Shown: positions 2,875 to 46,926 of the stretch, one piece after another | Position numbering within the stretch: position 1 is the stretch's first letter | Layout of the letters: the number at the start of each line of letters is the position of its first letter | NCBI GenBank assembly: GCA_026770705.1 | Contig: JANJGN010000001.1 | Span: 68,510,001 to 68,574,000, forward strand | Source: Isurus oxyrinchus | Taxonomy: Eukaryota | Length of the DNA: 64,000 nucleotides | Reading direction: 5' to 3' | Position numbers and translations under genes: made by a program | The notes under the pieces: model-generated | Told to the model about the DNA's origin: nothing | The model's database searches: none | What the model saw: only the letters and a program-made list of their open reading frames with translations

Positions 2875-3115
2875 ATTTCATGGGATATGGGCATCGCTAT
2901 CAAGGCATTTGCTGCCCATCCTGGATTGCACTTGGCTGCTAGCAAGCCACTCGGTTCATTTCAGGGCAGTTAAGAGTCAAGCACATTGCTCTGGACCTGG
3001 AGTCACACGTATATTAGACTATGTAAAGATAGCAGATTTCCTTCCCTAAAGGACATTAGTAAACCAGATGGTTTTTTACAATTGATGATAGGTTCATGGT
3101 CACCATTACTGATGC
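2875..3115 (-). mobile_element. Short SINE-like internal-deletion derivative of the tRNA-headed LINE family
   Basis: The reverse complement joins the LINE 5' domain (ccatctggtttactaatgtcctttagggaaggaaatctg, compare 17295-17333) directly to the LINE 3' tail (ggatgggcagcaaatgc...gcgatgcccatatcccatgaa, compare 20250-20305). Confidence 0.8.
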
Positions 3116-3305
3116 TACAATTCAATTATCCTTTATCCATAAATCTGAAAACCAAACACATCCAAGAACCACACGTTTAACCTCATCAAACTTTAGGAAG
3201 TCTAGTTGTTTGTCTGCACCATTTACCTTGTGATTTTTGTGGTGAAATTGTCAAAAAGAAACATTGCAGGTACCCTGTACTTATTATTCAGTGGCACATC
3301 TAGCC

Positions 3306-4547
3306 ATTTGTTACAATCTTCAGCCAGAAGTGCCGAGTGGATGATCCATCTCGGCCTCCTCCAGACGTCCCCAGCATCACAGATGCCAATCTTCAGCCAA
3401 TTCGATTCACTCCATGTGCTACCAAGAAATGGCTGAAGGCACTGGATATTGCAAATGCTATGGGACCTGACAATATTCCGGCAATAGTACTGAAGACTTG
3501 TGCTCCTGAACTTGCCATGCCCCTAGCCAAGCTGTTCCAGTACAGCTACAACACTGGCATTTACCTGGCTATGTGTAAAATTGCCCAGGTGTGTCCTGTA
3601 CACAAAAAGCAGGACAAATCCAACCCGGCCAATTACAGCCCTATCAGTCTACTCTCGATCATCAGTAAAATAATGGAAGGGATCATCAACAGTGCTATCA
3701 AGCAGCACTTGCTTAGCAATAACCTGCTCACTGATGCTCAGTTTGGGTTCCGCCAGGGCCATTCAGCTCCTGACCTCATTACATAGAAAGTAGGAGCAGA
3801 AGTAGGCCATTCAGTATGATCATGGCTGATCCTCTATCTCAACGCCATTTTCCAGTTTTCTCTCCACACCCCTCGATGCTCCTAATATCCAGAACATGAT
3901 CAATTTCTTTCCTGAATATGCTCAGTTGCCCAGCCTCCACAGCCTTCTGTGGTAGAGCCTTAGTTCAAACATGGACAAAAGAGCTGAACTCCTGAAGTAA
4001 GACTGCTCTTGACATCAAGGCAGCATTTGACTGAGTGTGGCATCAAGGAGCCCTAACAAAACTGGAGTCAATGGGAATCGGGGGAAAACTCTCTGCTGGT
4101 TGGAGTCATACCTAGCACAAAGGATGGTGGTTATGGTTGTTGGAAGTCAGTCATCTCAGCTCCAGGACATCACTGCAGGAGTTCTTCAGGGTAGAATCCT
4201 CAGCCCAACCATCTTAAGCTGCTTCATCAATGACCTTCCTTCCATCATAAGGTTAGAAGTGGGGATGTTCGTTGATGATTGCACAATGTTCAGCACCATT
4301 CGCGACGACTCAGATACTGAAGCAGTTCATATCCAAATGCAACAAGACCTAGACAATATCCAGGCTTGGGCTGACAAGTGGCAAGTAGTGTTCACAAGTG
4401 CCAGGCAGTGACCAACTCCTATAAGAGAGAATCCAACCATCGCCCCTTGATGTTTAATGGCATTACCACCATGGAATCCCCCACTATCAACATCTTGGGG
4501 GTTACCATTGACCAGAAGCTGATCTGGACTAGCCATATAAATACTGT
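3306..4547 (+). mobile_element. Internal RT fragment of the tRNA-headed CR1-group LINE family, interrupted by a CR1 tail
   Basis: ORFs 3337..3786 (GPDNIP...NYSPISLLS...QFGFR) and 4037..4411 (QG..LSP...FVDD); colinear with 18628-19720. Confidence 0.9.
3784..3956 (-). mobile_element. CR1 3' tail nested in the LINE
   Basis: Reverse complement of the typical tail gatcagccatgatc...gaatggcctacttctgctcctact; it splits the host LINE between attaca and gcctt. Confidence 0.75.
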
Positions 4548-4604
4548 GTGCTTTGTCTTAACTTTGCTACAAAAGTCTGAATCCACCAAAACGGCCAGCC
4601 TTGG

Positions 4605-8611: not shown

Positions 8612-9284
8612 AAGTAGAGGAGATTTGCACCGTCTGAAGTGGATTCAAACCCAGGACTTGAGTGAGAAGCCCTAATGAGCTAACCTGTTTCATAACTCTC
8701 CAATAGGTTGCATTAAATAATTCTGCACATTGCTTTTAAACATTTTGCTGTAAGATTTTTTAAAATAATGGTTCAATATAAAAGTCAGTATAAACATTGT
8801 GCAAATTAATAGCATTGTGAATTATTCATGATAAGACCTTCTAATGTCCTTGCCTTTTGAGCATGCAAGTTAGAAAAATAAGAGGCCAGGCTTTCTACTT
8901 GTGTATTCGCCAGCCTGCGATTTGCCTTTCTGTTGAAATGAAAACAATTTTTAAATTTGGAAATATTTTTAAATCAAATATTGATTTGATTGCTCGGTAT
9001 TATTAATGGAATCTTGCAAAGTTATTCTTGCATATTCAGGAAGTTTCTTTTACAGCTGTGCAAGACATATATTTAAAGGTCAAACACTGTAATGCACCAG
9101 TTAAAAGTAATGATGTGGTGGGAGGTATTTGGATGTAATGTAAGGCGAGGGACTGGATACCAGACGTTGAAATTCCATCCTTTTGTTCCCTGAAGGCCTG
9201 ACTGTTCCAATTCTCTTCTGACTGGCCTCCCATCTCCATTTCAGCTCTTATAAAACTCTGCTGCCTGTATCCTATCCTGCACTG

Positions 9285-14066: not shown

Positions 14067-14424
14067 TCTGTCCTACATCCCTTGCCTCCTGACATTGTTA
14101 ATCCACGATGGCCTTAAGTACAGGCAAAGCATCATGTTAGATCATTCTTATGCCCTGTGCTAGATAGGGAAGTTTTTCAACAGTATACTTCTGACATGGA
14201 ACTTCACCCTCTGGTGGCACATGTCTGAAATTCAGATTGCATTGCAAATAATTTTCTGGCAGTCATGGTTGGAAAATCATGCACAGTGCATGCCCAATTT
14301 CCAATATGTGGATGCATTGTTGAAGCTCTTCGTTGATGTTACAAGTTGGAAAATTAGCTCTTCACTGAATACACAGTTTTTATTGATACAAAAAATGATC
14401 AGTTTTCTTTTTATTCTATTTAAG

Positions 14425-14589
14425 ATAATCCTTGTCAGTTCATCGATGAATGATCGTGATCAGAGTCTCTTTGTGAGCATGGATGAGGGAGCCAACTTTC
14501 AAAAACAGCAGATCTTCTTCTCTCTGGAGACATTGGTTTTTCACCCCAAAGAAGAAGATAAATTGCTTGTGTACAGCAAGGAGGCTCGG
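14425..14589 (+). CDS. SORCS2: SORCS2-like VPS10-domain receptor, internal coding exon (165 bp, phase 0-0; about exon 4 in mammalian numbering)
   Basis: ttaag|ATAATC...GCTCGG|gtaagt. Translates IILVSSSMNDRDQSLFVSMDEGANFQKQQIFFSLETLVFHPKEEDKLLVYSKEAR, which contains the BNR/Asp-box SxDxGxxF and closely resembles SORCS2 as I recall it. Confidence 0.93.
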
Positions 14590-14650
14590 GTAAGTATGGC
14601 CATACACTGGATCCTTTCTCCTCTAGTGCAAAAACACCGCTAACACTCAC

Positions 14651-17130: not shown

Positions 17131-20100
17131 GGGGGATGCGGAGGTGTAGTGGTATTGTCACTGGACTAGTAATCCAGAGACTCAGGGTAATGCTCTGGGG
17201 ACCTGGGTTTGAATCCCTCCAAGGCAGATGGTGGAATTTGAATTCAATAAAAATCTGGAATTAAAAGTCTAATGATGACCATTGTTGTAAAAACCCATCT
17301 GGTTCACTAATGTCCTTTAGGGAAGGAAATCTGTAGTCCTTACCTGGTCTGGCCTACATGTCACTCCCACAGCAATGGCCTAGCAAGCCACTCAGTTGTA
17401 TCAAACCGTTACAAAGTCACAAAAAAAGAATGAAACCTGATGGACCACCGTAAACGACAATGGCAATCTCAGCCCTGTCAACCCTGCAACGTCCTCCTTA
17501 CTAACAGCTGAGGGCTAGTGCCAAAATTGGGAGATCTGTCTCACAGACTAGCCAAGCAACCACCTGACATAGTCATCCTCACAGAATCATACCTTACAGA
17601 TAATGTCCCAGATACCACCATCTCCATCCCTGGGTATGTTCTGTCCCACCAGCAGGACAGACCCAGCAGAGGTGGCAGCACAGTGATATACAGTCGGAAG
17701 GGAGTTGCCCTGGGGATCCTCAACATCGACTCCAGACCCCGTGAGGTCTCATGATATCAGGTCAAACATGGGCAAGGAAATGTCCTGCTGATCACCACCC
17801 TACCTAGCTAACAAATCAGTGCTCCTCCATGTTGAACACCACTTGGCCCTGCAAGGGTGCAGAACGTACTCTGGGTGAGGAACTCCAACGTCCATCACTA
17901 AGAGTGGCTCAGTAGCACCACTACTGACCAAGCTGGCCGAGTCCTAAATGACATAGCTATTTGACTGGGTTTGCGGCAGGTGGTGAGGGAACCAGCAAGA
18001 GGGAAAAACATACTTGACCTCATCCTCACCAACCTGTCTGCTGCAGGTACATCTGTCCATGACATTATCGGTAGGAGTGACCACCGCACAATTATTGTGG
18101 AGACAAAGTCCTGCCTTCACATGGAGGATACTCTCCATTGTGTTGTGTGGCACTACTGTGCTAAATGCAGATTTCAGACAGATCTAGCAACTCAAGACTG
18201 GGCATCCATGAGGCGCTGTGGGCCATCAGAAGCAGCAGAATTGTACTCAAACACAATCTGTAATCTCATGGCCCAGCAAATGCACCACTCTACCATTACC
18301 AACAAGCCAGGGAATCAACTGTGGTTCAATTAAGAGAGTAGGAGGGCATACCAGGAGCAGCACCAGGCATACTTAAAAAAGAGCAAGTCAACCTGGTGAA
18401 GCTGTAACACAGGACTACTTGCGTGCCAAACAACAAAAGCAGCTAGTGATAGACAGAGCTAAATGATCCCACAACCAACAGATCAGATCTAAGCTCTGCA
18501 GTCCTGCCACATCCAGTCGTGAATGGTGGTGGACAATTAAACGCCTCACTGGAGGAGGAGGCTCCACAAATATCCCGTCCTCAATGATGGAGGAGCCCAG
18601 CACATCAGTGCAAAAGATAAGGTGAAGCATTTGCTACAATCTTCAAGTAGAAGTGCCGAGCGGATGATCCATCTCGGCCTCCTCCAGGGTCCCCAGCATC
18701 ACAGATACCAGTCTTCAACCAATTCGATAGACTCCAAGTTATATGAAGAAATGGCTGAAGGCACTAGATACTGCAAAGGCTCTGGGCCCTGACAATATTC
18801 AGGCAATAGTACTGAAGACTTGTGCTTCAGATCTTGCCGAACCCCTAGCCAAGCTGTTCCAGTACAAGCCACAACACTGGCATCTGCCCAGCTATGTGGA
18901 AAATTGCGCAGGTATGTCCTGTACACAAAAAGCAGGACAAATCCAACCTGGCCAGTTATCACCCCATCAGTCTACTCTCGATCATCAGTAAAGTAATGCA
19001 AGGGGTAATCAACGGTGCTATCATGCAGCACTTGCTTAGCAATAGCCTGCTCACTGATGCACAGTTTGGGTTCTGCTAGGACCACTTAGCTCCTGACCTC
19101 ATTACAACCTTGGTTCTAACGTGGACAAAATAGCGGAACTCCCGAGGTGAGGTAAGGTGAGATGCCATCAAGGCTGCATTTGACTGAGATTGTCATCAAG
19201 GAACCCTTGCAAAAACTGGAGCCAATAGGAATCATGGGGTGGTGGGGGAGGGGGCTCTCCACTGGTTGGAGTCATACCTAGCACAAAAGAAGATGGTTGT
19301 GATTGTTGGAAGTCAGTCATCTCAGCTCCAGGACATCACTGTAGGAGTTCCTCAGGGTAATGTCCTTGGCTCAACCATCTTCAGCTGCTTCATCAATGAC
19401 ATTCCTTCCATCTATGTTTAGAAGTGGGGATGTTCGCTGGTGATTGCACAGTGTTCAACACCATTCATGACTCTTCAGATATTGAAGCAGTTCATGTCCA
19501 AATGCAGCAAGACTGTACAATATCCAGGCTTGGGCTGACAAGTGGCAAGTGACATTCATGCACACCAGTGTTAAGCAATGGCCACCTCCAGCAAGAGAGA
19601 ATCCAACCATCGCCCCTTGATCTTCAGTGGCATTACCATCTCTGAATCCCCCGCTATCAAAATCCTGGGGGTTACCATTGACCAGAAACAGAACTGGACT
19701 AGCCATATAAATACTGTGGCTACAAGAGCAGGTCAGAGGCTAGGAATCATGTGATGAGTAACTCACCTCCTGACTCCCCAAAGCCTGTCCGCCATCTACA
19801 AGGCACAGGTCAAGAGTGTGTTGGAATACTCCTCACTTGCCTGGGTGAGTGCAGCTCCCACACACTCAAGAAGCTTAACATCATCCAGGACAAAGCAGCA
19901 AGCTTGATTAGCACCACGTCCACAACATTTACTCCCTCCACCACCGACGCACAGTAGCAGCTGTGTGTACCATCTACAAGATGCACTGCAGGAATTCACC
20001 AAGGCTCCTTCGACAGCACTTCCCAAACCCACAACCAAGGAAAAGGGCAGTAGACAAATGGGAACACCACCACCTGGAAGTTCCCCTCCAAGTCACTCAC

Positions 20101-20314
20101 CACCCTGACTTGGAAATATATTGCCGTTCCTTCACTGTTGCTGGGTCAAAATCCTGGAACTCCCTTCCTAACAGCACTATTGGTGTACCTACATCACATA
20201 GACTGCAGCGGTTCAAGAAGGCAGCTCACCACCACCTTCTCAAGGGCACATAGGATGAGCAATAAATGCTAGCTCAGCCAGCGATGCTCACATCCTGTGA
20301 ATGAATAAAAAAAA
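17131..20314 (+). mobile_element. Full-length, decayed, single-ORF CR1-group LINE (APE + RT) with a tRNA-derived 5' head
   Basis: tRNA-like head 17131-17220. APE motifs VLLTN..GLVPK, DIVILTES, LDLILTN, SDH; RT motifs GPDNI, YHPISLLS, QFGF, GVPQGNVLG, FAGD (a decayed FADD). 3' tail gcaataaatgct...catcctgtgaatgaataaaaaaaa. No room for an ORF1. Confidence 0.9.
17141..17217 (+). promoter_or_regulatory. Putative type-2 Pol III internal promoter (A box/B box) in the tRNA-like head
   Basis: A box-like ggtgtagtggta, anticodon-like arm ctgga-ctagtaa-tccag (17161-17177), B box-like gggtttgaatccc (17205-17217). Confidence 0.7.
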
Positions 20315-21134
20315 GTTTGGCCTCCATGGCTGCCTGCAGCAACAACTTTCTCATCATGTGTCTGGAGGGTATCCTGCTCCCCTACATATGCAAGACATCA
20401 CTAGCCCTTTCCCTCTCCTTCAGCTAAAACCTCCAGCCCAGTTTTGGAATGCCTGGGTGTCTGGTAGCTCCCATGTTCGGCCATTCTCCTGTCTTTTGTA
20501 GTTCTGATTTAGCACCCAAAAAACTTCCAGCACTGATCACAATTCATTTCCCCTTTAAGTGGTGCAGTGTAGCTTTAAGTAGTGCCAACAAATCATTTTT
20601 GGGAGCTCTGTTGATGTGTGCAGCTAGCTAACATTGCATTTAGCACTGCCTGCATGCAAAGAAACAGGCAGCACAACGATGGCATCCTAACTGCATTATG
20701 TCCAATAGATGCCAAGTCCCCATCCAATTCGGCTATCAAAGAGTCGTATACAGTAATATTGACAAACATACATGTATTTATGGTATTTCTTGAATGCAGG
20801 AGTCTCTTGTTTGCATAGTATTTTTTTTTCACACAGCAAAATGTCTTGGCCTTTTCTGGTTGCACGGACTTTTGCTGAAACATAATTTCTCAGGCACCAG
20901 CTGCCCTCCAATACTTTATCTCGGCAGTCATTTTTCATGTGAGTCTAGTGAGAATATGTTAGGTGAATTGGCGAGATTATCACTGCTGTACTTGATCATG
21001 TGCTTACTTAATAACCCCAGGCCACCATTCACATTGACCTTAGTGGAACATTAAGTGTGTGTAAAATGAGCTGCTGATTCACTGTGAGCCTATGAGCAAA
21101 GACCAATTTCACCCTTCACTGTTTTGGAAACTTT

Positions 21135-22345
21135 TTTTGCATTCATGGGATGTAAGCAAGGCCAGCAATTATGCCCCATCCTGTATTGCAAATGAGAAGA
21201 TAGTGATGAGTCATCTTCTTGAACCGCTGCAGTCCATGTGGTGTAGGTACACCCACAGTGCTGTTAGGGAGGGAGTTCCAGGATTTTGACACAGTGACAA
21301 TGAAAGGATGGCAATATATTTCCAAGTCAGGGTGGTATGTGATTTGGAGGGAACTGGCATGTGGTTGTGTTCTCATACACCTGCTGTCCTTGCTCTTCTA
21401 GGTGGTAGAGGTTGTGGGTTTAGAAGGTGTTGTTGGAGGCGCCTTGGCTAGTTGCTTCAGTGAATCTTGTAGTTGGTGTACACTATGCACTATTGGTGGA
21501 GGGAATGAATGTTTAAGTTGTGGATACGGGTGCTGATCAAGTGGACTGCTTTGCCTGGATGGTGTCAAGCTCCTTGAGTGTTTTTGGAGCTGCATTCATC
21601 CAGCCAAGTGGAGAGTATTCCATCACAGTCCTGACTTGTGCCTTGCAGATGGCGAACAGGCTTTGGGGAGTCAAGAGGTGAGTTATCTCCACAGAATTTC
21701 CAGCCTCTCACCTGTTCTTGTAACCACTGTACTTATAAACTTATAAGACTGGTCCAGCCAAGACCCCAGGATGTTGATGGTAGGGTATTCAACAATGACA
21801 ATGCCATTGAATGTCTGGAGGAGATGGTTAGATTTGCTCTTGTAGAGATGGCCATTGCTTAGCTCTTGTGTTACATGAATGATACTTGCCACTTATCCAC
21901 CCAAGCCTAAATGTTGTCCAGGTCTCGCTGCATGTGGGCACAGATTGCTTCAGTACCTGAGGATCCACGAATGGTGCTGAACATTGTGCAGTCACCAGCG
22001 AACACCCCTACTTCTGAATTTATGGAGGGAAGGTCATTAATGAAGCAGCAATGGTCATTCGGCCTGGAACACTAGCCTGAGGAGTTCTGCAGCAATGTCC
22101 TCAGACGGAAATATTTGGCCTCCAACAACCACAACCATCTTCCTTTGTGCTAGATTTTATTCCAGCTGGTGGACAGTGTCTCCCCTGATTCCCATTCATT
22201 TTGCTAAGGCTCATTGATTCCACGCTGGGTCAAAGCGCAGTCATTTTCACCTCACCACACCTCTGGAATTCAGCTGTTTTGTCTGTGTTTGGACCAAGGC
22301 TGTAATGAATTTTGGAGATGAGAGGTCCTGTTCTACAAGTGCTGC
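21135..22345 (-). mobile_element. 3' part of the same tRNA-headed LINE family
   Basis: Reverse complement of about 19090-20305, including VTVSKSWNSLPNSTVGVPTPHGLQRFKK and the tail. Confidence 0.88.
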
Positions 22346-22398: not shown

Positions 22399-22982
22399 TC
22401 ATTTTTTAAAAATTCAATCCCCTCTCAAAAATGGACACGGTAAAGTGAAAGAAGGCACAAGTTTAAAATACTTTCACTCATCCGTTTTAAATTGGAAAAG
22501 CAATTTATGAATAATAAATGAAAAAAAAATTACAGGCGAGATGGGAAACGTGAACAAGAGGAGAAGGATTTTTAAAATTCTTTCATGGGATGTGAGCCTT
22601 GCTGGCTAGGCCAGCATTTATTGCCCATCCCTAATTGCCCTTGGGAAGGAGGTGGTGAGCTGCCTCCTTGAACCGCTGCAGAGTACCTGCACCACATGGA
22701 CTGCAGCGGTTCAAGAAAGCAGCTCACCACCACCTCGAGGGCAATTAGGGATGGGCAATAAATGCTGGCCTAGTCAGCGAGGTGCTCATCCCATGAAAGA
22801 ATTTTTTAAAATCCTTATTTTTCCCTTTATCATGTTTTCCAATTTGGCCTATAATTTTGTTCACTTATTCATAAATTGTTTTTTCAATTTAAAACAGATG
22901 AGTGAAAGTATTTTAAACTTGTGTCTTCTTTCACTTCGCCATATCCATTTTTGAGAAGGGACCAAATTTTTTAAAAAAATGT
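22399..22982. repeat. ~590-bp imperfect palindrome (inverted duplication of a LINE tail plus flank)
   Basis: Arms are reverse complements, e.g. aagtttaaaatactttcactcatc / gatgagtgaaagtattttaaactt and gcatttattgcccatccctaattgccct / agggcaattagggatgggcaataaatgc; spacer about 22682-22701. Confidence 0.92.
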
Positions 22983-28745: not shown

Positions 28746-30029
28746 AGTTTGAGATTGTATTTTGGCCCATACCTTGGTGATTTTTGGTGTTAATTATACA
28801 ACGAATTGGAGGATGGGAATTATTTACAATTCATCTTGGGCTGTTGCTAGGAGTGGTTGTCCCACAGGAGTACTGTTGTGACAGTTGGCTGGTTGAGGTG
28901 TTCTATTAAATCCACACAGTGGGGCACATACCAAGGGTGGTGAAAGGTTTCTCTGAATCCTTTGAATGGAGGGCACTTTACTTGATTGGCTGCAGACGTC
29001 TGTGATTGATAATTTAACAGGCAGAGATTTCACCTGATGAATTTAAAATGACAATTCTCGAATAAATACTGAGGTAGTCAGCACAACTGTGACTCTCCAT
29101 CACCAGCTGTAAGGCTGGGTATTTTTAAGTTTCTTGCCAGCTTGACAAGTGAAATCAGACTGGTATATGGTTAACAGCTATATTCAGAAAGAATGCAAGT
29201 TACATTTTTATTAGTTTACATATTGAGGAGTGGAGAGAAAATATACCCCATTATGAAAACTGTTTATTGTTCCTTCATTTATTTCACACAACTAAAACCA
29301 TTTGCTTGTTCAAAACTTGTGTTTCAATTTAGTAACTGTGCTTATCTGGTCCATCAAGCGTAAAGAGAGGAGTATTCATTTGGCAGTACATCAGTTCTCT
29401 TCAGGTCGTTATAACACATGAAATCCATTTACAGGAGTGATGAATGAAGCTGCAACCAAGAAGTTATCTAGCATTTAAAAAAAACACAAACCATTGTTGA
29501 TAGTTGGATACAGTGAAACTTGTTTTGGAACACTTGGTGGTATAATAATGTTTGTTTATCTTCTGGGACTTTCTTCCAATGCAATCAAACTGAAGTAATA
29601 AGGGATTCCCTTCCTACTCACAAATGAGTTTGAATGATGTCAGTGCATTGTTTCCAGCAAAATTGGTAGGCAATTAACTTCTTCTGAAAGGAGTTGAATA
29701 ATTATCCATTTTGAGCTTATTGGTATCAATATAGACTAAGTTAAACAAATATTCACAGCACATAATGGTTCTTGTTGGGGAGGGGCTGGAAGATGGACAG
29801 CATGCTCAGAATAGAGCAATATCCTAGAGTCCTGCTTGAATGTCTTTTTGGAACCAGGGAGCATTAATGAAGAATATTTCCAGAAGATTAAATGGATGGA
29901 ATGGAGTCTGTGACCCTAGGATAGAGGGGTCCACCATCTGGGGAAGTAGGGGACTTAATAGTATTTTGTCGTTTCTATCCTTTATGTATGATTGCATTTA
30001 TATGAAGCTTGCTGTGTCTGCTCGCCACA

Positions 30030-30972
30030 GAACTCCTAGCCTCTGACCTGCTCTTGTAGCCACAGTATTTATATGGCTAGTCCTGTTCAGTTTCAGGTCA
30101 ATGGCAATCACCAGGATGTTGATATTGGGGATTCAGTGGTGGTAATGCCTTTGAATGTCAAGCGGAGATGGTTAGATTCTCTCTTGTTGGAGATGGTCAT
30201 TGCTCGGCACTTGTGTTGTGGTGCGAGTGTTACTTGCCACATACAGCCCAAGCCTGGATATTATCCAGATTTTGCTGCATTTAGATATGGACTGCTTCAG
30301 TATCTGAGGAGTCGCGAATGGTGCTGAACATTGTGCAATCATCAGCAAACATCCCTACTACTGATCTTATGATGGACGGAAGATCATTGATGAAGCAGCT
30401 GAAGATGGTTGGGCCTAGGACACTATCCTGAGGAATACCTGCAGTGATGGCCTGGAACTGAGATGAGTGACCTCCAACAACCACAGTCATCTTCCTTTGT
30501 GCTAGGTATAACTCCAACCAGCAGAGGGTTTTCCTTCTTATTCCCATTGACTCCAGTTTTGCTAGGGCTCCTTGATGCCACACTCAGTCAAATGTGGTCT
30601 TGATGTCAAAGGCAGTCACCCTCACTTCACCTCTGGAGTTCAGCTCTTTTGTCCATGTTTGAACCATGGTTGTAATGAGGCCAGGAGCTGAGTGACCCTG
30701 GCAGAACGCAAACTAGTCACCAGTGAGCAGGTTATTTCTGAGCAAGTGCAGCTTGATAGTACTGTTGATGAACCCTTCCATCACTTTACAGATGAACAAG
30801 AGTAGATTGATAGGGCGGTAATTGGCCAGGCTGGACTTAGTCCTGATTTTTGTGTACAGGACATACCTGGGTGATTTTTCACATGGTTGGGTAGATACCA
30901 GTGTTGTAGCTGTACTGGAACTGCTTGGCTAGGAGTGTGGCAAGTTCTGGAGCACAAGTCTTCAGTACTATT
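30030..30972 (-). mobile_element. RT fragment of the tRNA-headed LINE family
   Basis: ORF 30281..30583 GIPQDSVLGPTIFSCFINDLP...MFADDCTMF. Confidence 0.9.
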
Positions 30973-31079
30973 GAGGTGGTCTTACAGAGGTGGCCTTCAT
31001 GATGGTGCACATATGTATTCACAAGATCAGTAGCTTGGGGGTCAAGTATGACAGCAAGTTGCAAACAATCTGGTTCAGC

Positions 31080-39100: not shown

Positions 39101-42100
39101 GTAGAAATTTTCCAACCACTCAGGAGCACCTGGTGCTGATGTAACTATGATGCAATGTCACATGATAAAAGACTGAGAAGTACAACCTTGTGCAGAGTAA
39201 TGAGATGTGTATATGTAGGTCTGTAAATAAACAAGAATGGTTATTACAGATAACAGTCCATGGTAGCGTTCTTAGAGTAACAGACAAACCCTAAAGAAAC
39301 CCCATCTAGACCTGAACCCAAGACAAAACAGCTATGTACCTATGTGATTCCCACCCTACCCCATGATCATTTCAAACCTACAGCCCATGATCTCCTCACA
39401 ATTTCCTCATGACTTCCCCACCCTGATCCATAATTTTCTGCTGACCCACAATGTCTCCACCATCTCCTCACATCCTACCATCTTCCAATCTCCCGCTGTC
39501 CTTTTCTCCCTTGACTCATGACCTCTTCCCCCACCCCTGACCTATGAACTACTCCCAATCAAGGATGTCTCCCTGACCCACAATCTCCCTCATAATCTCC
39601 GCCTCCCCAACCCACCATCTCCCCCAATCCACAATCTGTATCAAGCTGTTTATTTTTGTCAAGCAGCAGTTAAGTAAAGCATTGGCCCCAGAACATGGTT
39701 AAGGAATGTATGCAACATATTGTGATGATCAGGCTTTTGATATGTGAATCTCTTCAGGATTTTGAAGAATTTGATACTAAAGCAGGAAAGGATTGTGGAA
39801 TGGCCTAAATGCACCTTTTTTTCCTCTAAATGATATTTTATATATAAGCTTTATATATATGTATATATATATATATAGTGCATATCATGCAATTATGTGT
39901 TTTGTCAGAAATGGTTTTCAGTTTAGAGATTTTCTTTCTCCCACCCCTTCCTTTTGCTTTTCAGTTTTTTCCCTTTGCTTTTCAACCTCATATCATTTCC
40001 ATTTCCACTAAGACCCAGGTGGGCAATTGTCTGCTTAGCAATGTCCATGCAGAAAAAAAATTGATCTTTTTCATTTTTCCCAGTCCAGTAACTCACAAAA
40101 TCTGACTTTAGAGACGTAAAGGTAGATAGTGAAGTCTCAGGAGAGTGAGCATCAGGTAGAAGGATCATGCAAGGAATAGGAATGAAGATCAAGCAGAACT
40201 CAAGGACCAGAACACAATTCAGGCAACATTCTGAAGAGGAGTAAGTTGATAGATCAGGAAGACACAGGAGAAAAACAGGCAGGCAAACAGATCGAGAGAC
40301 GAACTGGAATAAAGCTCAGGCAAACATTTTGAATGATTTTCCATTTTTATTTGTTGTGTACTTTCCAGCTACTGAATGTGACAGTGTGCAGCTCTTATAT
40401 TAATGAAATTTTACCCTCTGACCCTCCCTTGGGTGATTTAAAATTCCTCCCCTTTCTCCTGAAAAAAATGTTGTACAGTGGGATCAGCTTTTCTCTCTCA
40501 TCTCCAAAAGAAAACCTTGAAAGTCCTTCCGAGATTGGGAACTTACCATACAAGGAGATTGTCCAACAGAAACTGAGTTCTGTATTTTTAATGGGATTGA
40601 TATGTCTGAATAAGCACTGCAAACTGTGTGGTAGTAATTAATAACTTTATTTTCAGACTAGAATATTTTGCCAAAGAATAACAAACCAACATAAAGGAGG
40701 TCTTGAAGTGTAATTACTACAGTGTGCTTACAGGAGGCCATCTAGTGTTCAGTTAATAACATACAAGTGTCATGCATATCACAAGTGTTTATTAAGAACT
40801 GAAGTATGTTGTGAGAGATAACATCTACCAGCTAAGTGATAATTGTCAAATGTAAAATGCGCAAGATTTCACCTAATGATGTGTAAAACATCATAAAATG
40901 TAAGAAATAAGCTTGTTCTACATAACGTGTTCAAATTCCAATGTTTATTTCATTTTGTCTGTCTGAAAGGAATATTTGCCAAAGTAATACAATATTGCTG
41001 GAAAAGTTGAAAAGCAAATACAAAAACAAATTTAAAATATTTTGACAAGGTATAAACCAGATTGAAATATACAGGTTTCCACCATTAAAATAGTGTAGAG
41101 AAAATATAAACATATTGAACGTTCAAATGATAATATCATTTACTGACATTTCCAGGCTGTTTGTAGTCAATGGGTATGAAATCTAGTCCACAGTCTTACT
41201 CTGTGAGTAGTTGCTAGGCTCGTGTATATTGAATGTCTTGGTTTTAATATGTTAAGATAGTATTTAGTCTTTTTTAAAAAGTCTTATTTCCATTATCATA
41301 ATTGAGTTAAAGCTCAATCGCAACTATAAAACCCAAGGAACATATTTTCCCACTTAGGCAAACAAAATGCCTGCTAGCAGTACATGGTCAACTAGCTTGG
41401 CAGGGGGATGGGAACCAGAGAGGGAATTCAGAGAGAAGAGGAACAAAGCTGGTAATGGTTGGAAGAAAAGTAGCAAGGGAAATTGGAAGGCAGTGGAAAC
41501 AAAAGCCAAGATTAAAATAGGGTCCAAATACAGAAAAATATTAAAAAGGCAAAATTAAAGGCTCTTTGTGAATGCACGTAGCATTTGCCACAAGGTAGAT
41601 GAATTGACGGCGCAAATAGACCTAAACAGGTATGATTTAATTGCCATTAGCCAGATGTGGCTATGAGGTGACCAAGGCTGGGAACTGAATATTCAAGGAT
41701 ATTAGACATTTAGGAAGGATAGGCAAAATGGAAAAGGAAGTGGGTATTACTGTTAATAAAGGATAAGATCAGTACATTAGTGAGAGGGGATTTTAGATCG
41801 GAAGATCAAGATGTAGAATCCATTTGGATGGAGCGAAGGTAAAAATAAAAGGGGAAACAAACATTGGTGGGAGTTCTTTATAGGCCACCAAACAGGGGTA
41901 GCAATGTAGGACACAGTATAAATCAGGAAATTAGGGGTGCATGTAACAAGGGTAATACAGTAATCATGGGGGCCTTCAATCTACATATAGACTGGGTAAA
42001 CTTAACTAGCATTCGTACTGTGGAGGATGAATTTTTGGAACGTATGCGAGATGGTTTTCTAGAACAGTATGTTGAGGAACCAACTAAAGAACGGGCTATT

Positions 42101-43434
42101 TTAGATCTAATATTGTGCAATGAGCAAGGTCTAATTAATAACCATTATAAAGGAGCCTTTACGAAAGAGAAATCATAATATGATAGAATTTTATCTTAAG
42201 TTTGAAAGTAGTTCAGTCCGAAACTAGGGTCTTAAATCTAAACAATGGAAACTATGAAGATATGAAGGGCAGATTGGTTGTGGAACTACAGTAAAGGGTA
42301 TGATGGTAGACAGGCAATGGCTAGCATTTAAAGAATTAATCTATAGTTTACAACAATTTTACATTTCTTTGAGGCACAAAAAGCCAACAGAAAAACTGAA
42401 CAAACCATGGTTAACGAGAACCTAAAGATTGTATTAGATCAAAGAAAGAGGCTTCTAAAAGTTGCCAAAAAATGCATAGTAAATCTGAGGATTGGGAGCA
42501 TTTTAGTATTCTGCCAAGGATGAAGAAAGGGAAAATAGAATATGAAAGTAATCTACCGAGAAACATACAAATGGACTGCAAAAGTCTCTATAAATATGTA
42601 AATAGGAAAAATTAGCAAAGACAAATGTGCCCAATACAGGCAGAGACAGGAGACTTCATAATGGGGAATAAGAAATTGGCAGAGAAATGAAACAAATACT
42701 TTTGTGTGCGTTTTCATGGAGGAAGATACAAAAAACCTCCCAGAAATGCTTGAGAACCAAGGGCCTAGCGAGAAAAAGGAACTGAAAGAAGTTAGTATCA
42801 GTTAAGAAGTAGCACTAGAGAAATTAATGGGATTGAAAGTTGATAAATCCCCTAGACCTAATGATCTACATACCAAAGTATTGAAAGAAGTGACTGTAGA
42901 GATGGTGGAAGCATTCGTGGTTATCTTCCAAAATTCTATAGATTCTGGAACTGTTCCTGCAGAATGCTACCTCATTATTAAGGAAAGGAGGGAGAGAGAA
43001 AACGGGGAGCTACATACAAACCTGTTAGCCTGACATCAGCCTGGAATCTATTACAAAGCGTGTGATAACTGGACACTTAGAAAATAATGATAGGATTGGG
43101 TATAGTCAACATTGATTTATGAAAGTGAAATCATGTTCAACAAACCAGTTATGCATGTATAGTGGCAGAATGGATGTGGTGTATTTGGATTGTCAGAAAG
43201 CTTTCAAAAAGGTCCCACATAAGAGTTAGAACACAAAATTAGAGCATGTGGGATTGGGAGAAACATACTGTCATGGTTTGGAAGTTGGTTAACGGACAGA
43301 AAATGAGAGTAGGAATAAATGGGTCATTCCCAGGTTAGCAGGCTGTTACTAGTGGGGTACTGCAAGTATCAGTGCTTGGACTCCAGCTATTCACAATGGA
43401 TATTAGTGATTTGGATGTAGGGACCAAATGTAAT

Positions 43435-44109
43435 GGGCAGAATTTTGCCCTTGATGGGTGGGCCGCCGAACTCCGCCACCGAAGCGGGCCCCGCCGCCAT
43501 TTTAAGTGGGCGGGCCAATCAAGACCTGCCCAGCAGTCTACCTGACGGAAAGCACTATGTGCTTCCTGTGCAGGGGGAGGGATTCCCCAATTGTCAAAGT
43601 GTGCTCTTTCGCGCATGCACGCAAAAGAGCGCACTGCTCCCTGAGACTAAGTGCTGTCTCACGGATATCACTGACAGTGCTTCAAAGTTTAAAAATAGAA
43701 TAAAAAAAATATTAACATGTCCTCCTCATGTGACAATGTCACACGAGATGGGACAAGATAATACATCTCACACAAAGTTTATTAAAGATTTTTAAAACGG
43801 ACATGAAACCTCATCCCGCCAGTGGATGAGGTTTCATGTTTTATCAGAAGCCCGCTGGGGCTCTTGGCCTGCCCGCCAGCCTTAAGGTTGTGCGGGCAGG
43901 GACTTTAATTGGGTTAATGATCATGTCAATGGCCTCAATTGGCCATTGACAGGTCGGCGGGCAGACAGCTGATTTCCCTGTCCGCCCGCCTGCCGGAATA
44001 TTTAAATGGACTGGGATGACATCGGGGGTTCCTCCCGACATCATCCCACATCATTTTCCCGTCGGCGAGTGGGCCCCGCCCCCAAATTGCCGATGGGAAA
44101 ATTCTGGCC
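43435..44109. mobile_element. PIF/Harbinger-type MITE nested in CR1
   Basis: TIR gggcagaatttt / aaaattctggcc with 3-bp TSD aat; removing it restores the CR1 sequence aaatgtaatatttccaag. Confidence 0.88.
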
Positions 44110-44634
44110 AATATTTCCAAGTTTACTGCTGATACAAAACTAGGTGAGAATGTGAGTTGTGAGGAGGATGCTAGAGGCATCAATGGGTTTTAGACGGGCT
44201 AAATGAGTGGACAGATGGAATGTAATGTGGAAAAATGTGATATTATCCACAATAACGGGAAAACGGAAAGGCAGAGTGTTTCTTAAATGGTGAGAGATTG
44301 GGAAGTGTGGATGTCAAAAGGGACCTGGATGCCCTTGTTCATGAGTCACTGAAAGCTACCTTGTAGGTGCAGCAAGCAATTGCGAAGGCAAATGGTATGT
44401 AGGCCCTTATTGCAAGAAAATTGCAGGACAGGAGTAAAGATGTCTTGCTGCAGTTGCATAGAGCCTTGGTGAGACCGCACCTAGAATATTGTGCACAGTT
44501 TTGGTCTCCTTACCTAAGGAAGGATATATTTGCCATAGAGGGAGTGCTTTGAAAGTTCACCAGACTTAATTCCTGAGATGGCAGGATTGCCCTATGAGGA
44601 GAGATTGAGGAGACTAGGCCTGTATTCTTTAGAA

Positions 44635-45813
44635 CAGGCTTGTCCAACTTTTCACTTGAAGGGCCACATTTCCATTTTCTTCTCACTCAAGGGGCTGATA
44701 AGCAAATTTCAGAAAGATAAGGCTTGGCACAGCATTAAACATTAATTTCAAAATTAAGTTACAGTATGAGGAAAAGAAAGAACTTGCTGAGCAAAAATAA
44801 AGCAATGTCAAAGCAAAAAATTGATAATTAATAAAGATCAACATTAGAGTGTGAGAGGGACAGAGTCTGTTTGTCTGCTCACTCATTCACCCTCACCCAC
44901 CTTGTGAGTTGGTGTGATTGTGTGTTGGTTTGTGAGGATTAGTGGGAATCCTGAGACTACAATTGAGGTAGACACACAGACACTCATTCCCACACGTGCA
45001 CACAAACTCACACACTCACTCGTTCTCTCTCCCACAATCACTCACACTCTCTCCCACAGTCATTCACTCACTCACTCTCCCATACTCACTCTCTCTCCCA
45101 CATGCCTGGGCAGCAAGTCTTTTCCCTCCCCAGCCTGGCCTGGCACAAAGCAATTCTCTCCTGGCACGGCCTGGCCCGGGATGGGGCGAGTTTTTCCCAG
45201 CCCAGCAATGAGTAAGCCTCTCTTGGCCTGGCACAAACAAGTCCCTTCTGGGCCGGCATGGAGCAAGTCTCTTCTGGCCCAATCTGGCATGACACTGGTG
45301 CCAGTCTCTTCCGGCCTGACACTGGAGCGAGTCTCTTCCGGCCTGACACTGGAGTGAGTCTCTCCTGGCCCGGCACTGGAGCGTGTCTCTCCCGGCCCGG
45401 CACTGGAGCGAGTCTCTCCTGGCCCGGCACTGGAGCGAGTCTTTCCTGGCCCGGCACTGGAGTGGGTCTCTCCTGGCCCTGCACTGGAGTGGGTCTCTCC
45501 TGGCCCGGCACTGGAGTGGATCTCTCCCGGCCCAATCCAGCACGGCACTTGTGCCGTCTCTCCCGGCCCGGCATGATGCGAGCCCCTCCCGGTCCCCTTC
45601 CCCAAAGCCCATCCGCTGCCACCAGTGTTACCGCTCCTCCAATCACAGACTACTTCTCTCCCACATTTGTGCCATCAGCAGCAAACACTGGAGATGAACA
45701 GCCTGTGATTGGAGGAGGTGTTTTTTTCAGAATCTTCTACTGCAGTTAGCATTTTGACAACTGCCTCTGGAGGCCACATTGCGGCGCTTCAGGCTACCTG
45801 TTGGACAAGCCTG
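44635..45813. mobile_element. Non-autonomous hAT (Charlie/Buster-like) element nested in CR1
   Basis: Perfect 14-bp TIR caggcttgtccaac / gttggacaagcctg; 8-bp TSD ctttagaa / ctctagag with central TA; CR1 coding sequence resumes on both sides. Confidence 0.88.
45290..45572. repeat. GC-rich 27-bp minisatellite (about 9-10 units)
   Basis: Unit ctggagcgagtctctcctggcccggca; 9-aa periodicity in overlapping ORFs (LQCRARRDS). Confidence 0.92.
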
Positions 45814-46926
45814 CTCTAGAGTTTAGAATAATGGGAAATGATCTCATTGAAACATACAAATTTCTTACAGGGCTGGAGAGTGTAGATGCAGGAAGGATGT
45901 TTCCCCAGGGTGGGGAGTCTAGAACCAGGGGATACAGTCTCAGAATAAGGGGCAGGCAATTTAGGACTGAGGTGAGGAGGAATTTCTTCACACAGAGGGT
46001 GGTGAATTTTTGGCATTCTCTACCCCAAAGGGCTGTGGAGGTTCAGTCATTAAGTATGTTCAAGCCAAAGATCGAAAGATTTCTATATATTAATGACATC
46101 AAGGATTATGGGGATGGTGCGGAAAAATGTTGTTGAGTTAGAAGATCAGCCATGATCTAGTTGAATGGCAGAGCAAGCTCGAAGGGGCGAATGGCCTATT
46201 TCTGCTCTTATTACCTATGTTCAGACTGAAGTTTTGGCATTCTGAGTTATAAAACAGTGTCACTTCAGGAAATACACTGTTAAATATAAAATGAACATCA
46301 GCTGCAAAATCCATACCTTAAAGGAGACAGTTTGAGGTTTAGAAATATACTAGATTTAAACAGCACTAATGACTCCTCTCTCCACTCATCCATAAACAGA
46401 AAGGTGTTTTGATTTGTCTCCCTCTTCGTAAATGATGGCATCTCTCCCAACCCCTTGGCATTTGTGGGATCCAATTTTTTATTAATAACCCCATTGCAAA
46501 CTCGAGATAGGATGAACTAAAAGAGTTAGCTTATTGCACACGTTCAAACTGTGAAAGGAGTGTCCCAATGACACCTCCACACTTAGACAATAAAGAGAGG
46601 GATAGAGAAAAGAAAGCTTTACAGTACGGAGACCACAGAAAAACTAAATATTTGTTTCATGGGAGTTCCAGAGTCCAGAATTAAAGTCCAATGAGTTATT
46701 CCTTTACGGATGTTGGTTGGCTGAAAACTGATGTTGCATAATTCATTTTTCCAGTGGTGTTGACTTCACACAATGAGATAGGCATGCAGAGGTAAGTCAA
46801 TCTTGTAAGTGATGGTACAGAACTTCGTCAGAAGCAGGGTAGATGGGGCCAGGTGCCCAACCCTGGGCCAGAGCTTCTTTGGTGTGGCCTGGTAGCCAGA
46901 TGTTAAACAGCAGTCTGAGCTATGCA

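What the first reader, a model, noticed from the sequence alone, without database searches (positions are those of the whole stretch)
17131..20314. Candidate RNA polymerase III-transcribed autonomous LINE: tRNA head, single APE-RT ORF, no oligo-T terminators
Seen: the element begins with a tRNA-like head (A box ggtgtagtgg, ctgga/tccag anticodon-like arm, B box gggtttgaatccc). The APE domain starts only about 360 bp from the 5' end, so there is no ORF1, followed by RT and an A-rich tail. In a line-by-line manual scan I found no TTTT on the sense strand across ~3.2 kb, while AAAA runs are frequent. The other family fragments (3306-4547 excluding its insert, 21135-22345, 30030-30972) also lack sense-strand T4, whereas the ordinary CR1 at 41370-46222 has many. 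Established: four or more T residues terminate vertebrate Pol III, SINEs use tRNA-derived A/B boxes, and LINEs normally use Pol II 5' UTR promoters. Inference: the whole protein-coding element was under selection to be read through by Pol III, i.e. a self-sufficient 'SINE with its own RT'. A rough expectation at ~23% T is several T4 runs. The first downstream T4 is in the flank at 20442.
Basis: partly seen in the sequence, partly recalled or inferred. Interest (0 to 1): 0.9.

Follow-up and report, generated by a model that had tools for sequence, protein, structure and literature searches.

The report
tRNA-headed shark LINE lacking T-runs
This is a worn-out copy of a very abundant shark jumping gene that starts with a tRNA-like signal and has purged runs of T from its coding strand, which suggests but does not prove that RNA polymerase III copied it, something not described for a protein-coding jumping gene.

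Summary
Window 17131-20314 (+) is a decayed but full-length single-ORF APE-RT LINE; it aligns to residues 16-977 of a 983-aa relative. It begins with a weak tRNA(Thr)-like head (Rfam tRNA 12 bits, below threshold; ARAGORN finds none) and has 0 T4+ in 3184 nt.

The head is not a chance neighbour:
- The partner SINE equals 17131-17397 joined to 20230-20314.
- Eight whale-shark gene-model fragments read through the same leader into the APE, and four of them start in the SINE-shared body.
- First readers of this scan noted the same build at 8 or more other places in this genome (unchecked).

In 547 in-frame codons TTT occurs 2 times against 11.5 in synonymous shuffles (0 of 1000 as low). None of 32 xTT codons is followed by T. 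AAA, CCC, GGG and pyrimidine tracts are as expected. Thirteen sister LINE ORFs and two other LINE-like elements in this window show no comparable loss.

Eight paper searches listed no such LINE.

The parts
17131..17139 (+). First bases of the element, ahead of the tRNA-like fold; likely transcript start zone
   Evidence: BLAST self-hit limits. In run X8, 869 contigs have loose ends before 17143, with low agreement among them (0.44), meaning different flanks. Most of these contigs are probably SINE copies.
17140..17221 (+). tRNA(Thr)-like head: acceptor GGAGG/CCUCC, anticodon loop CUAGUAA, A-box-like 17142-17152, B-box 17206-17216, about 20 extra nt before the T arm
   Evidence: Rfam tRNA model positions 1-71 match at 12 bits, E 5.3, below the gathering score of 29. 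ARAGORN finds none. Fold -35.8 kcal/mol, z -2.1. Motifs.
17222..17397 (+). Body shared with the partner SINE. This copy lacks two short stretches that other copies have, at about 17281 and 17367.
   Evidence: SINE-form joint 17397->20230 in X1 contigs, and loose-end clusters at 17281 and 17367. The SINE copy at 2999-3081 matches 17285-17367 at 83%.
17398..17429 (+). Short LINE-only leader between the SINE-shared part and the start codon
   Evidence: Whale-shark fragments P0005 and P0152 read through it. There are eight upstream ATGs in 17131-17429.
17430..20253 (+). Decayed single ORF, APE then RT. The ATG at 17430 is the start used by whale-shark models P0010, P0023 and P0153. In this copy the ATG at 17440 is the one in frame with the APE.
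   Evidence: P0060 residues 16-977 map to 17455-20238 in frames 1/2/3/1. Pfam Exo_endo_phos, Exo_endo_phos_2 and RVT_1 hits are weak. At least 20 stops. Translations.
20230..20314 (+). 3' tail shared with the SINE: two AATAAA (20261, 20304) and a terminal A run
   Evidence: Joint 17397->20230. Further tail copies at 22569-22681 (-) and 22683-22802 (+). AATAAA positions.
20442..20445 (+). First T4 after the element; where a Pol III transcript of this copy would be expected to stop
2890..3130 (-). 5'-truncated copy of the partner SINE (body plus LINE-type tail)
3305..4548 (+). 5'-truncated copy of the same LINE family (RT part) with an insert at 3784-3957; 0 sense-strand T4+
21161..22329 (-). 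Older 5'-truncated copy of the family (73.5% identical); 0 sense-strand T4+
30026..30973 (-). 5'-truncated copy of the family (81.5% identical); 0 sense-strand T4+

Best explanation
SHOWN. The stretch is a dead, full-length copy of a very abundant elasmobranch LINE with one ORF (endonuclease plus reverse transcriptase). Its own 5' end is a tRNA(Thr)-like A/B-box head followed by a body of about 180 nt. Its partner SINE is the same element with the ORF cut out: 17131-17397 joined to the last 85 nt. In the coding part, runs of T on the sense strand have been removed at codon junctions, beyond what protein sequence and codon usage require. Runs of A, C and G and pyrimidine tracts are untouched. 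Sister LINEs and other LINEs of this genome do not show this.

INFERRED. The family's full-length RNA was made by RNA polymerase III from the internal promoter in the head. Because the promoter is inside the transcript, every new copy carries it. Selection kept the 3.2 kb free of T-run terminators, so the polymerase reached the tail and stopped at the first T-run in the flank (20442 in this copy). Translation of such an uncapped RNA would have to start internally, past eight upstream ATGs, and needs no ORF1 protein. I put the architecture at about 0.85. The confidence given here (0.5) is for the Pol III step.
For: Anatomy.

Head and LINE are one unit:
- The SINE-form joint 17397->20230 is seen in DNA contigs.
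- No SINE tail lies between the SINE-shared part and the ORF, and no second tail follows 20314.
- Of 29 close protein fragments mapped, 8 extend upstream of 17512, and all 8 match this leader. Four of them reach the SINE-shared body: P0001 at 17307, P0012 at 17320, and P0005 and P0152 at 17375. By eye, P0012 also reads the B box.
- Seven of the 8 fragments are whale shark by accession.
- First-reader notes describe the same build at 8 other places in this genome (unchecked leads).

T-run loss:
- P(T) 0.221, P(T|T) 0.164, P(T|TT) 0.096, P(T|TTT) 0 of 11.
- On 547 in-frame codons, TTT occurs 2 times against a shuffle mean of 11.5; 0 of 3000 and 0 of 1000 synonymous shuffles are as low.
- 0 of 32 xTT codons are followed by a T, and 0 of 17 TTx codons are preceded by a T, although 15.9% of codons start with T and 22.7% end with T.
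- AAA, CCC, GGG, Y6+ and Y8+ are at expectation.

Controls:
- 14 of 32 sister loci have an ORF of 895 aa or more. All 14 have 2-22 T4+, at 0.63-1.58 of the mononucleotide expectation.
- 13 sister ORFs put through the same shuffle give TTT at 0.82-1.23 of the mean.
- Another LINE of this window (47462-49236, minus strand) gives 23 against 25.4, and the CR1-like ORFs give 31 against 30.9.

Plausibility: Kroutter et al. 2009 (PMC2666806; abstract and passages) found that Pol III-made SINE transcripts retrotranspose without ORF1p. They also used the presence of T4 terminators to argue against Pol III for SVA.
Against: - No transcript data. All runs on offer were contigs, which cannot show starts, strand or caps.
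- The head fails the tRNA detectors, so promoter strength is unknown.
- Only two copies are shown to carry the B box together with the APE: this one, and P0012 by eye.
- The share of full-length copies with a head is unknown.
- Depth at 17451 is far lower than at 17535 (35,388 against 2,254,602 in X1). Two listed contigs stop aligning near 17470-17476. So many copies differ from this one in the leader, through an indel or something else.
- T4 alone is not significant once TT and TTT are accounted for (dinucleotide shuffle 6%; synonymous shuffle 11%).
- Selection against T4 alone would not obviously remove T3.
- From recall: no natural Pol III transcripts of 3 kb are known to me, and Pol III RNAs lack a cap and are poorly translated.
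- The tail carries two AATAAA, as Pol II mRNAs do.
- The tested copy is decayed, and only 547 of about 940 codons were usable.
Confidence: 0.5

Rival explanations
1. The head-bearing LINE is a real family, but Pol II transcribes it, as in other LINEs. The tRNA-like head plus body is simply its 5' UTR. It might act as a TFIIIC-bound open-chromatin site, as an RNA end-processing or stability module, or as a relic. On this reading the T-run loss reflects another RNA-level pressure, such as U-tract binding proteins, pausing or decay.
For: The tail has two AATAAA. LINEs are held to be Pol II units (Kojima 2018, Discussion). T3 as well as T4 is depleted, which a strict T4 terminator rule does not require. 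The sister LINEs have the same single-ORF build without any tRNA-like head: 0 tRNAs in 32 loci and 0 A+B box pairs.
Against: No other LINE tested shows the T-run loss, so a general Pol II or mRNA pressure does not explain it. Pyrimidine tracts and ATTTA are not significantly depleted, which argues against splice-site or ARE avoidance. Eight upstream ATGs are awkward for cap-dependent scanning. A T-run purge coinciding with an A/B-box head at the exact 5' end would have to be accidental.
Confidence: 0.3
2. The master LINE has no head; its 5' UTR is the 'body'. Head-bearing LINE copies arise again and again when the reverse transcriptase, copying a LINE RNA, switches within the shared body onto an abundant SINE RNA. 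On this reading they are dead-end chimeras.
For: Template switching onto small RNAs and SINEs is documented for L1, with the Alu portion sense-oriented and full-length (bioRxiv 10.1101/2025.02.02.635956, passages). Kojima's model builds SINEs by adding a head to a bipartite LINE. The SINE and LINE here share about 180 nt in which a switch could occur.
Against: It leaves the family-specific T-run purge unexplained. No loose-end cluster at the head/body border (about 17222) is among those listed, whereas one at the head's 5' end is (only the best supported of 13,146 are shown, so this is weak). All 4 whale-shark fragments that reach that far continue into the shared body. Only P0012 extends far enough to test the head, and it appears to have it.
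Confidence: 0.13
3. Chance or one-off event: a SINE lying next to a 5'-truncated LINE, or a single SINE/LINE chimeric insertion.
For: Only one head-plus-LINE copy lies in this 64-kb window.
Against: The LINE part is not truncated; it covers residues 16-977 of 983. The SINE part lacks its own tail at the junction. The same junction and leader recur in whale-shark fragments. The SINE itself is exactly the two ends of this element.
Confidence: 0.03
4. A site-specific LINE that inserts into the SINE at a fixed position, as Tx1-type elements do with their targets.
For: A follow-up note reports a Tx1-type LINE behind a tRNA-Thr-like head elsewhere in this genome (s1-871382).
Against: After the A run at 20314 the flank is unrelated sequence. 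There is no remainder of a SINE and no second tail.
Confidence: 0.02

Closest known systems
tRNA-derived SINEs that share a 3' tail with a partner LINE, e.g. the HE1 SINE / HER1 LINE pair of sharks and rays (Ogiwara et al. 1999; seen only as a table row and reference in PMC3747384; the paper itself is not held)
   Same: tRNA-like A/B-box head; the tail is identical to that of a CR1-group LINE; huge copy number in elasmobranchs.
   Different: Here the head and body also sit on the protein-coding LINE. I had no HE1 or HER1 sequence, so I could not test whether this is that pair. HE1 is listed as a V-SINE.
Bipartite non-autonomous LINE derivatives and SINEs built from them (Bov-tA/Bov-B, RTE and Vingi cases; Kojima 2018, PMC5786205; abstract, Introduction and Discussion read)
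   Same: The SINE consists of the LINE's 5' part plus its 3' end (joint 17397->20230).
   Different: Kojima found such 5' contributions only for the RTE and Vingi clades, assumed the LINEs are Pol II units, and placed the tRNA head on the SINE alone. Here the autonomous element carries the head. By its relatives it does not appear to be RTE-like, but the clade was not formally assigned.
Single-ORF LINEs of the L2/CR1 group (UnaL2, ZfL2-2; recalled, not checked here) and the 32 sister loci fetched
   Same: About 3.2-3.7 kb; one APE-RT ORF starting about 25 residues before the endonuclease; no ORF1.
   Different: The sisters have no tRNA-like head and have normal T-run counts.
Chimeric U6/L1, tRNA/L1 and Alu/L1 insertions made by template switching (bioRxiv 10.1101/2025.02.02.635956; passages)
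   Same: A small Pol III RNA or SINE lies in sense orientation at the 5' side of LINE sequence.
   Different: Those are single events with a truncated L1 and a full-length Alu. Here the LINE is complete, the SINE tail is missing at the junction, and the junction recurs in another species.
R2, a LINE made by co-transcription with rRNA by Pol I and released by a ribozyme (recalled; ribozyme-bearing LINE 5' ends are mentioned in Kojima 2018)
   Same: A precedent for a LINE whose RNA is not a capped Pol II product.
   Different: R2 depends on its target gene's promoter. Here the promoter would be internal and portable.
Marked Alu and other Pol III-driven reporter transcripts (Kroutter et al. 2009, PMC2666806; abstract and passages)
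   Same: Pol III transcripts are used efficiently by LINE ORF2p without ORF1p, and T4 runs must be absent from whatever is to be read through.
   Different: Those are engineered, non-coding and mobilised in trans. This is a natural element that would encode its own enzyme.

Membership tests
Autonomous APE-type LINE (CR1/L2 group, single ORF) | Apurinic-type endonuclease domain at the N-terminus | tested here: met
   Pfam Exo_endo_phos E 0.005 and Exo_endo_phos_2 E 0.026 on the pieces, both below the curated cut-offs. P0060 and P0139 align from residue 16/21.
Autonomous APE-type LINE (CR1/L2 group, single ORF) | Reverse transcriptase domain downstream in the same ORF | tested here: met
   RVT_1 E 0.0014 and 0.004 on two pieces. 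P0060 residues 513-853 map to 18879-19904.
Autonomous APE-type LINE (CR1/L2 group, single ORF) | Assignment to a named clade (L2, CR1, Rex1 and so on) by RT phylogeny | not tested
   No reference set of named clades was on hand.
Autonomous APE-type LINE (CR1/L2 group, single ORF) | Pol II promoter in the 5' UTR | not testable with these tools
   No raw RNA reads.
tRNA-derived SINE (SINE2) | tRNA-derived head with A and B boxes | tested here: inconclusive
   The B box matches 10 of 11 and the A box 9 of 11 to recalled consensus motifs. Rfam tRNA scores 12 bits against a gathering score of 29. ARAGORN finds none.
tRNA-derived SINE (SINE2) | Short and non-coding | tested here: not met
   3184 nt with a complete APE-RT ORF. 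The short partner (17131-17397 plus 20230-20314) does meet it.
tRNA-derived SINE (SINE2) | No internal T4+ terminator, with a stop in the flank | tested here: met
   0 T4+ in 3184 nt; first T4 at 20442.
One-off SINE/LINE chimeric insertion | 5'-truncated LINE joined to a complete small RNA or SINE; single locus | tested here: not met
   The LINE is complete. There is no SINE tail at the junction. The same leader and body occur in whale-shark fragments.
Site-specific LINE in a SINE/tRNA target (Tx1-like) | The rest of the target follows the LINE's 3' end | tested here: not met
   Unrelated flank after 20314.
HE1 SINE / HER1 LINE of elasmobranchs | Sequence identity to the published HE1 and HER1 sequences | not tested
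   No reference sequence was available, and the paper is not held.
Pol III transcription unit | Transcript with a 5'-triphosphate start about 10 nt before the A box; sensitive to Pol III inhibitors; bound by TFIIIC/POLR3A | not testable with these tools
   Contigs only.

The most novel reading that the evidence does not exclude
An autonomous, protein-coding LINE family of sharks that carries a portable internal Pol III promoter and is transcribed end to end by RNA polymerase III. Its 3-kb ORF is kept free of T-run terminators, it is translated without a cap, and it retrotransposes without ORF1p. In effect it is a SINE that encodes its own enzyme, and its partner SINE is its ORF-deleted offspring.
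Probability: 0.45. Interest if true: 0.92.

Novelty: new variant of a known kind. Interest (0 to 1): 0.8.

Why it matters
SINEs and LINEs are told apart by polymerase (Pol III against Pol II) and by coding capacity. Kojima's 2018 paper on SINE origins, whose Discussion I read, states that LINEs are Pol II units and that SINEs cannot encode a protein.

A LINE that owns a tRNA-type promoter and has purged terminators from a 3-kb ORF would blur that line in several ways:
- It would give a natural case of a long, translated Pol III transcript.
- It would offer a simple origin for its SINE, by deletion of the ORF, rather than by assembly from parts.
- It might help explain the very large copy number of this family in shark genomes.

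Even if Pol II proves to be the polymerase, the family-specific removal of T3+ at codon junctions is a clean selection signature that needs an explanation.

Tried and rejected
- Detecting the head as a tRNA. ARAGORN on the window found 0 genes. Rfam on 801 nt gave no tRNA hit. Rfam on 121 nt gave tRNA at 12 bits, E 5.3. I therefore call it tRNA-like, not a tRNA gene.
I therefore have no DNA of a second full-length copy. The evidence from other copies is at protein level (whale-shark models) or from contig summaries.
- The search for homologous proteins with P0012 (6 hits) and P0152 (10 hits) added only P0151, P0152 and P0153.
- Read laying. Depth is summed contig depth, so I did not use it as copy number. 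It lists only the best supported of 13,146 loose-end clusters and 32 of 643,234 pieces. It could not count LINE copies with or without a head.
- T4 alone as a statistic. I rejected it as too weak (6% in dinucleotide shuffles; 11% in synonymous shuffles) and replaced it with TTT and codon-junction counts.
- Splice-site, pyrimidine-tract or ARE avoidance as the cause. Y6+ 13 against 13.2, Y8+ 4 against 2.6, ATTTA 0 against 1.3; none significant.
- Target-site duplication. GTTGG before against GTTTGG after the element is too short to use.
- The search of earlier findings by sequence was blank, and a longer word query was blank.
- Literature. Eight searches listed no LINE with a tRNA head or Pol III transcription. 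I saw listings and abstract starts only, except for the papers named elsewhere in this report. One search was badly chosen and returned HER1 receptor papers. PMC6274825 (passages) and PMC4824008 (passages) held nothing on the point.
- Sources not seen. I did not ask for supplements, which are closed. Kojima's supplementary lists, and Repbase and Dfam, which I cannot see, may hold a description of this family.


Full report
WHAT IS THERE

Window 17131-20314 (+) is one repeat unit; BLAST against the window gives its limits. It has these parts:
- Nine bases, then an 82-nt tRNA-like fold at 17140-17221.
- A body at 17222-17397.
- A 32-nt leader.
- A decayed ORF from the ATG at 17430 or 17440 to the stop at 20251-20253.
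- A tail that ends in AATAAA and an A run at 20314.

The full-length relatives P0060 (983 aa) and P0139 (967 aa) align from residue 16/21 to residue 977/845, across frames 1, 2, 3 and 1. So the whole APE-RT protein is represented, and only about 300 nt precede it. Pfam sees endonuclease and RT only weakly on the stop-free pieces. The copy is dead: there are at least 20 stops in the four frame segments, plus frame changes.

THE HEAD

ARAGORN finds no tRNA in the window. Rfam's tRNA model aligns end to end (model positions 1-71) to 17140-17221, but at 12 bits (E 5.3 on 121 nt; gathering score 29). The alignment has an acceptor stem GGAGG/CCUCC, an anticodon arm with loop CUAGUAA (AGU, Thr), and an extra stretch before the T arm. 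The B box at 17206-17216 matches 10 of 11 positions of the consensus I recall. The A-box-like site at 17142-17152 matches 9 of 11. 'tRNA-like head with A and B boxes' is fair. 'tRNA-derived' is plausible but not shown.

DOES THE HEAD BELONG TO THE LINE?

1. The junction is not that of a chimera. No SINE tail lies between the SINE-shared part and the ORF, the LINE is not truncated, and nothing SINE-like follows the A run.

2. Laying the contigs of two DNA runs and two possible RNA runs at 80% likeness showed a huge family (771,896 contigs laid in X1). It also showed a joint 17397->20230 with two letters between. The partner SINE is therefore this element's 5' 267 nt plus its last 85 nt. A 5'-truncated SINE copy lies at 2890-3130 (-).
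   - X8 has 869 loose ends before 17143 with low agreement, which marks a common 5' border with varied flanks. Most of those contigs will be SINEs.

3. A search of 1.84 billion representative proteins with the APE N-terminal piece gave 18 hits below 1e-10, all of them short fragments.
   - I mapped 29 close fragments onto the element.
   - Eight extend upstream of 17512, and all eight match this leader.
   - Four reach the SINE-shared body: P0001 from 17307, P0012 from 17320, and P0005 and P0152 from 17375.
   - The N-terminus of P0012 reads, by eye, the translation of the B box.
   - Seven of the eight are Rhincodon typus gene models by accession. The eighth, P0153, is also from EukProt.
   - Fragments with unrelated N-termini (P0003, P0004, P0008, P0014, P0015, P0016, P0018, P0020) join inside the APE at 17545-17617, so they are ordinary 5'-truncated copies.

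4. The scan's own first readers described the same build, 2.8-3.55 kb long, at eight other places in this genome. These are unchecked notes and I use them only as leads.

Against a simple picture, depth at 17451 is about 60-fold lower than at 17535 in X1. Two listed contigs stop aligning near 17470-17476. The whale-shark models carry extra residues just there, so an indel in this copy's leader is the likely cause. I could not verify this.

T-RUNS

The element has 0 T4+ and 18 A4+.
- Mononucleotide shuffles: mean 5.8 T4+; 0.2% of 2000 reach 0.
- Dinucleotide-preserving shuffles: mean 2.6; 6% of 500 reach 0.

So T4 alone is borderline. The loss starts earlier: P(T) 0.221, P(T|T) 0.164, P(T|TT) 0.096, P(T|TTT) 0 of 11. 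For A the same series is flat or rising. The four other family fragments behave alike, with 0 of 15 TTT followed by T, though they overlap one another and are not independent.

I took eight stop-free in-frame stretches (547 codons, 1641 nt) and shuffled synonymous codons among positions.
- TTT: mean 11.5 against 2 observed. None of 3000 shuffles and none of 1000 was as low.
- T4+: mean 1.8 against 0 (11%).
- The two TTT that remain are Phe codons.
- None of 32 codons ending in TT is followed by a T, and none of 17 codons starting with TT is preceded by a T. Yet 15.9% of codons start with T and 22.7% end with T. By my arithmetic that is about 5e-5.
- AAA (32 against 36.9), CCC (27 against 26.9) and GGG (29 against 28.3) are at expectation. 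So are pyrimidine tracts (Y6+ 13 against 13.2; Y8+ 4 against 2.6).

The purge is therefore specific to T homopolymers, acts at the nucleotide level, and is on the sense strand only.

CONTROLS

A second metagenome scan, with P0060 plus P0139, fetched 32 sister LINE loci. They are at most 54% identical to this element's pieces, so they are not this family.
- Fourteen have ORFs of 895 aa or more. Their T4+ counts are 2-22, at 0.63-1.58 of the mononucleotide expectation. L001, with the same T content (23.5%), has 7 T4+ and 40 TTT.
- Thirteen of them, put through the same shuffle, give TTT at 0.82-1.23 of the mean. Three are mildly low (P 0.01-0.04).
- None of the 32 has a tRNA by ARAGORN or an A+B box pair by my pattern. 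My A-box pattern was too strict to catch the shark head itself, so that null result is weak.

Within this genome:
- The RT-bearing ORFs at 47462-49236 (-) give TTT 23 against 25.4 and T4+ 4 against 4.1.
- ORFs of the CR1-like element give TTT 31 against 30.9 and T4+ 7 against 5.6. The frames of the latter are not verified.

MECHANISM

The best reading is that the head is a portable internal Pol III promoter, and that the ORF has been kept readable by Pol III.
- Shown: the head is at the exact 5' end, the family shares it, and selection acts against sense-strand T-runs in this family only.
- Inferred: the polymerase, the stop in the flank (20442 here), cap-independent translation past eight upstream ATGs, and independence from ORF1p.

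Kroutter et al. 2009 (abstract and passages) give experimental colour. Pol III-made SINE RNAs insert faster and need no ORF1p, whereas a Pol II-driven Alu behaves like a pseudogene transcript. The authors also reject Pol III for SVA because SVA holds T4 terminators.

Points against:
- No natural 3-kb Pol III transcript is known to me (recall).
- T3 depletion goes beyond a strict T4 rule. Weak non-canonical terminators are known (recall).
- The tail has two AATAAA. From recall, some Pol III SINE RNAs are polyadenylated through such signals.

The rivals are Pol II with another pressure against U-tracts, recurrent template switching in the shared body, a one-off chimera, and site-specific insertion. 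They are weighed in their own sections. The last two are contradicted by the junction anatomy.

There is one: 17440 is in frame in this copy, and 17430 is the start of three whale-shark models.

COMPARISON WITH WHAT IS KNOWN

The element works like a SINE at its front and like a single-ORF L2/CR1-group LINE in the rest. The SINE-as-two-ends-of-a-LINE pattern is known for RTE and Vingi (Kojima 2018). In those cases the tRNA head sits on the SINE only and the LINE is taken to be a Pol II unit.

Sharks have a published tRNA-headed SINE and partner LINE (HE1/HER1, table row in PMC3747384). I could not compare sequences, and the paper is not held.

Eight searches of the paper library listed nothing on a LINE with a tRNA head or Pol III transcription. 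Repbase, Dfam and all supplements were out of reach, so 'not described' is provisional.

VERDICT

- The architecture is real at family level (about 0.85).
- Pol III transcription is the leading explanation but unproven (about 0.5).
- This is a new variant of a known kind now, and would be a new kind of retrotransposon expression if the polymerase is confirmed.

Noticed in passing
window 22402-22977: A long palindrome. Arms 22402-22514 and 22865-22977 are 88% complementary. Inner arms 22569-22654 and 22725-22810 consist of two LINE/SINE tails lying head to head. It looks like an inverted duplication centred on a tail, or two tails inserted back to back.
   Followed up: partly
window 8640-8690 (-): A second, different tRNA-like head, with an A-box-like TAGCTCATTAGG and a B-box GGTTTGAATC 31 nt apart. 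Another repeat body follows it. It is probably another SINE family.
   Followed up: no
window 47462-49236 (-), beside the N run 47047-47187: Another LINE with long open RT-bearing ORFs (333, 262 and 257 aa; RVT_1 E 1.3e-4) and normal T-run counts. I used it as a same-genome control. The N run was left alone.
   Followed up: partly
window 14221-14640 (+): A 140-aa ORF with a weak Sortilin-Vps10 match (E 6.3e-5, below the cut-off). It may be a host exon.
   Followed up: no
run X20 (coral metagenome, metatranscriptomic RNA-Seq): 3110 contigs of this shark repeat family were laid, 212 of them 99% or more alike. This means shark or ray nucleic acid is present in a coral sample, as environmental DNA/RNA or as contamination.
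   Followed up: no
proteins P0014, P0015, P0018: These gene models join apparently host-like protein sequence to a 5'-truncated piece of this LINE's endonuclease (junction at 17554). This is either annotation read-through or exonised LINE fragments. I did not look up their source.
   Followed up: no
loci L001-L016: Metagenome contigs of 3.2-5.5 kb each hold one intact APE-RT ORF of 895-1235 aa from unknown eukaryotes. Several contigs are about as long as one element, as if an active LINE had been assembled as a consensus.
   Followed up: partly
window 17281 and 17367: This copy lacks two short stretches that most family members have. Loose-end clusters mark them: 1940 and 1237 contigs at 17281 in X1 and X8, and 23 contigs at 17367 in X20. 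It also probably lacks some codons just after the start codon, compared with the whale-shark models.
   Followed up: partly
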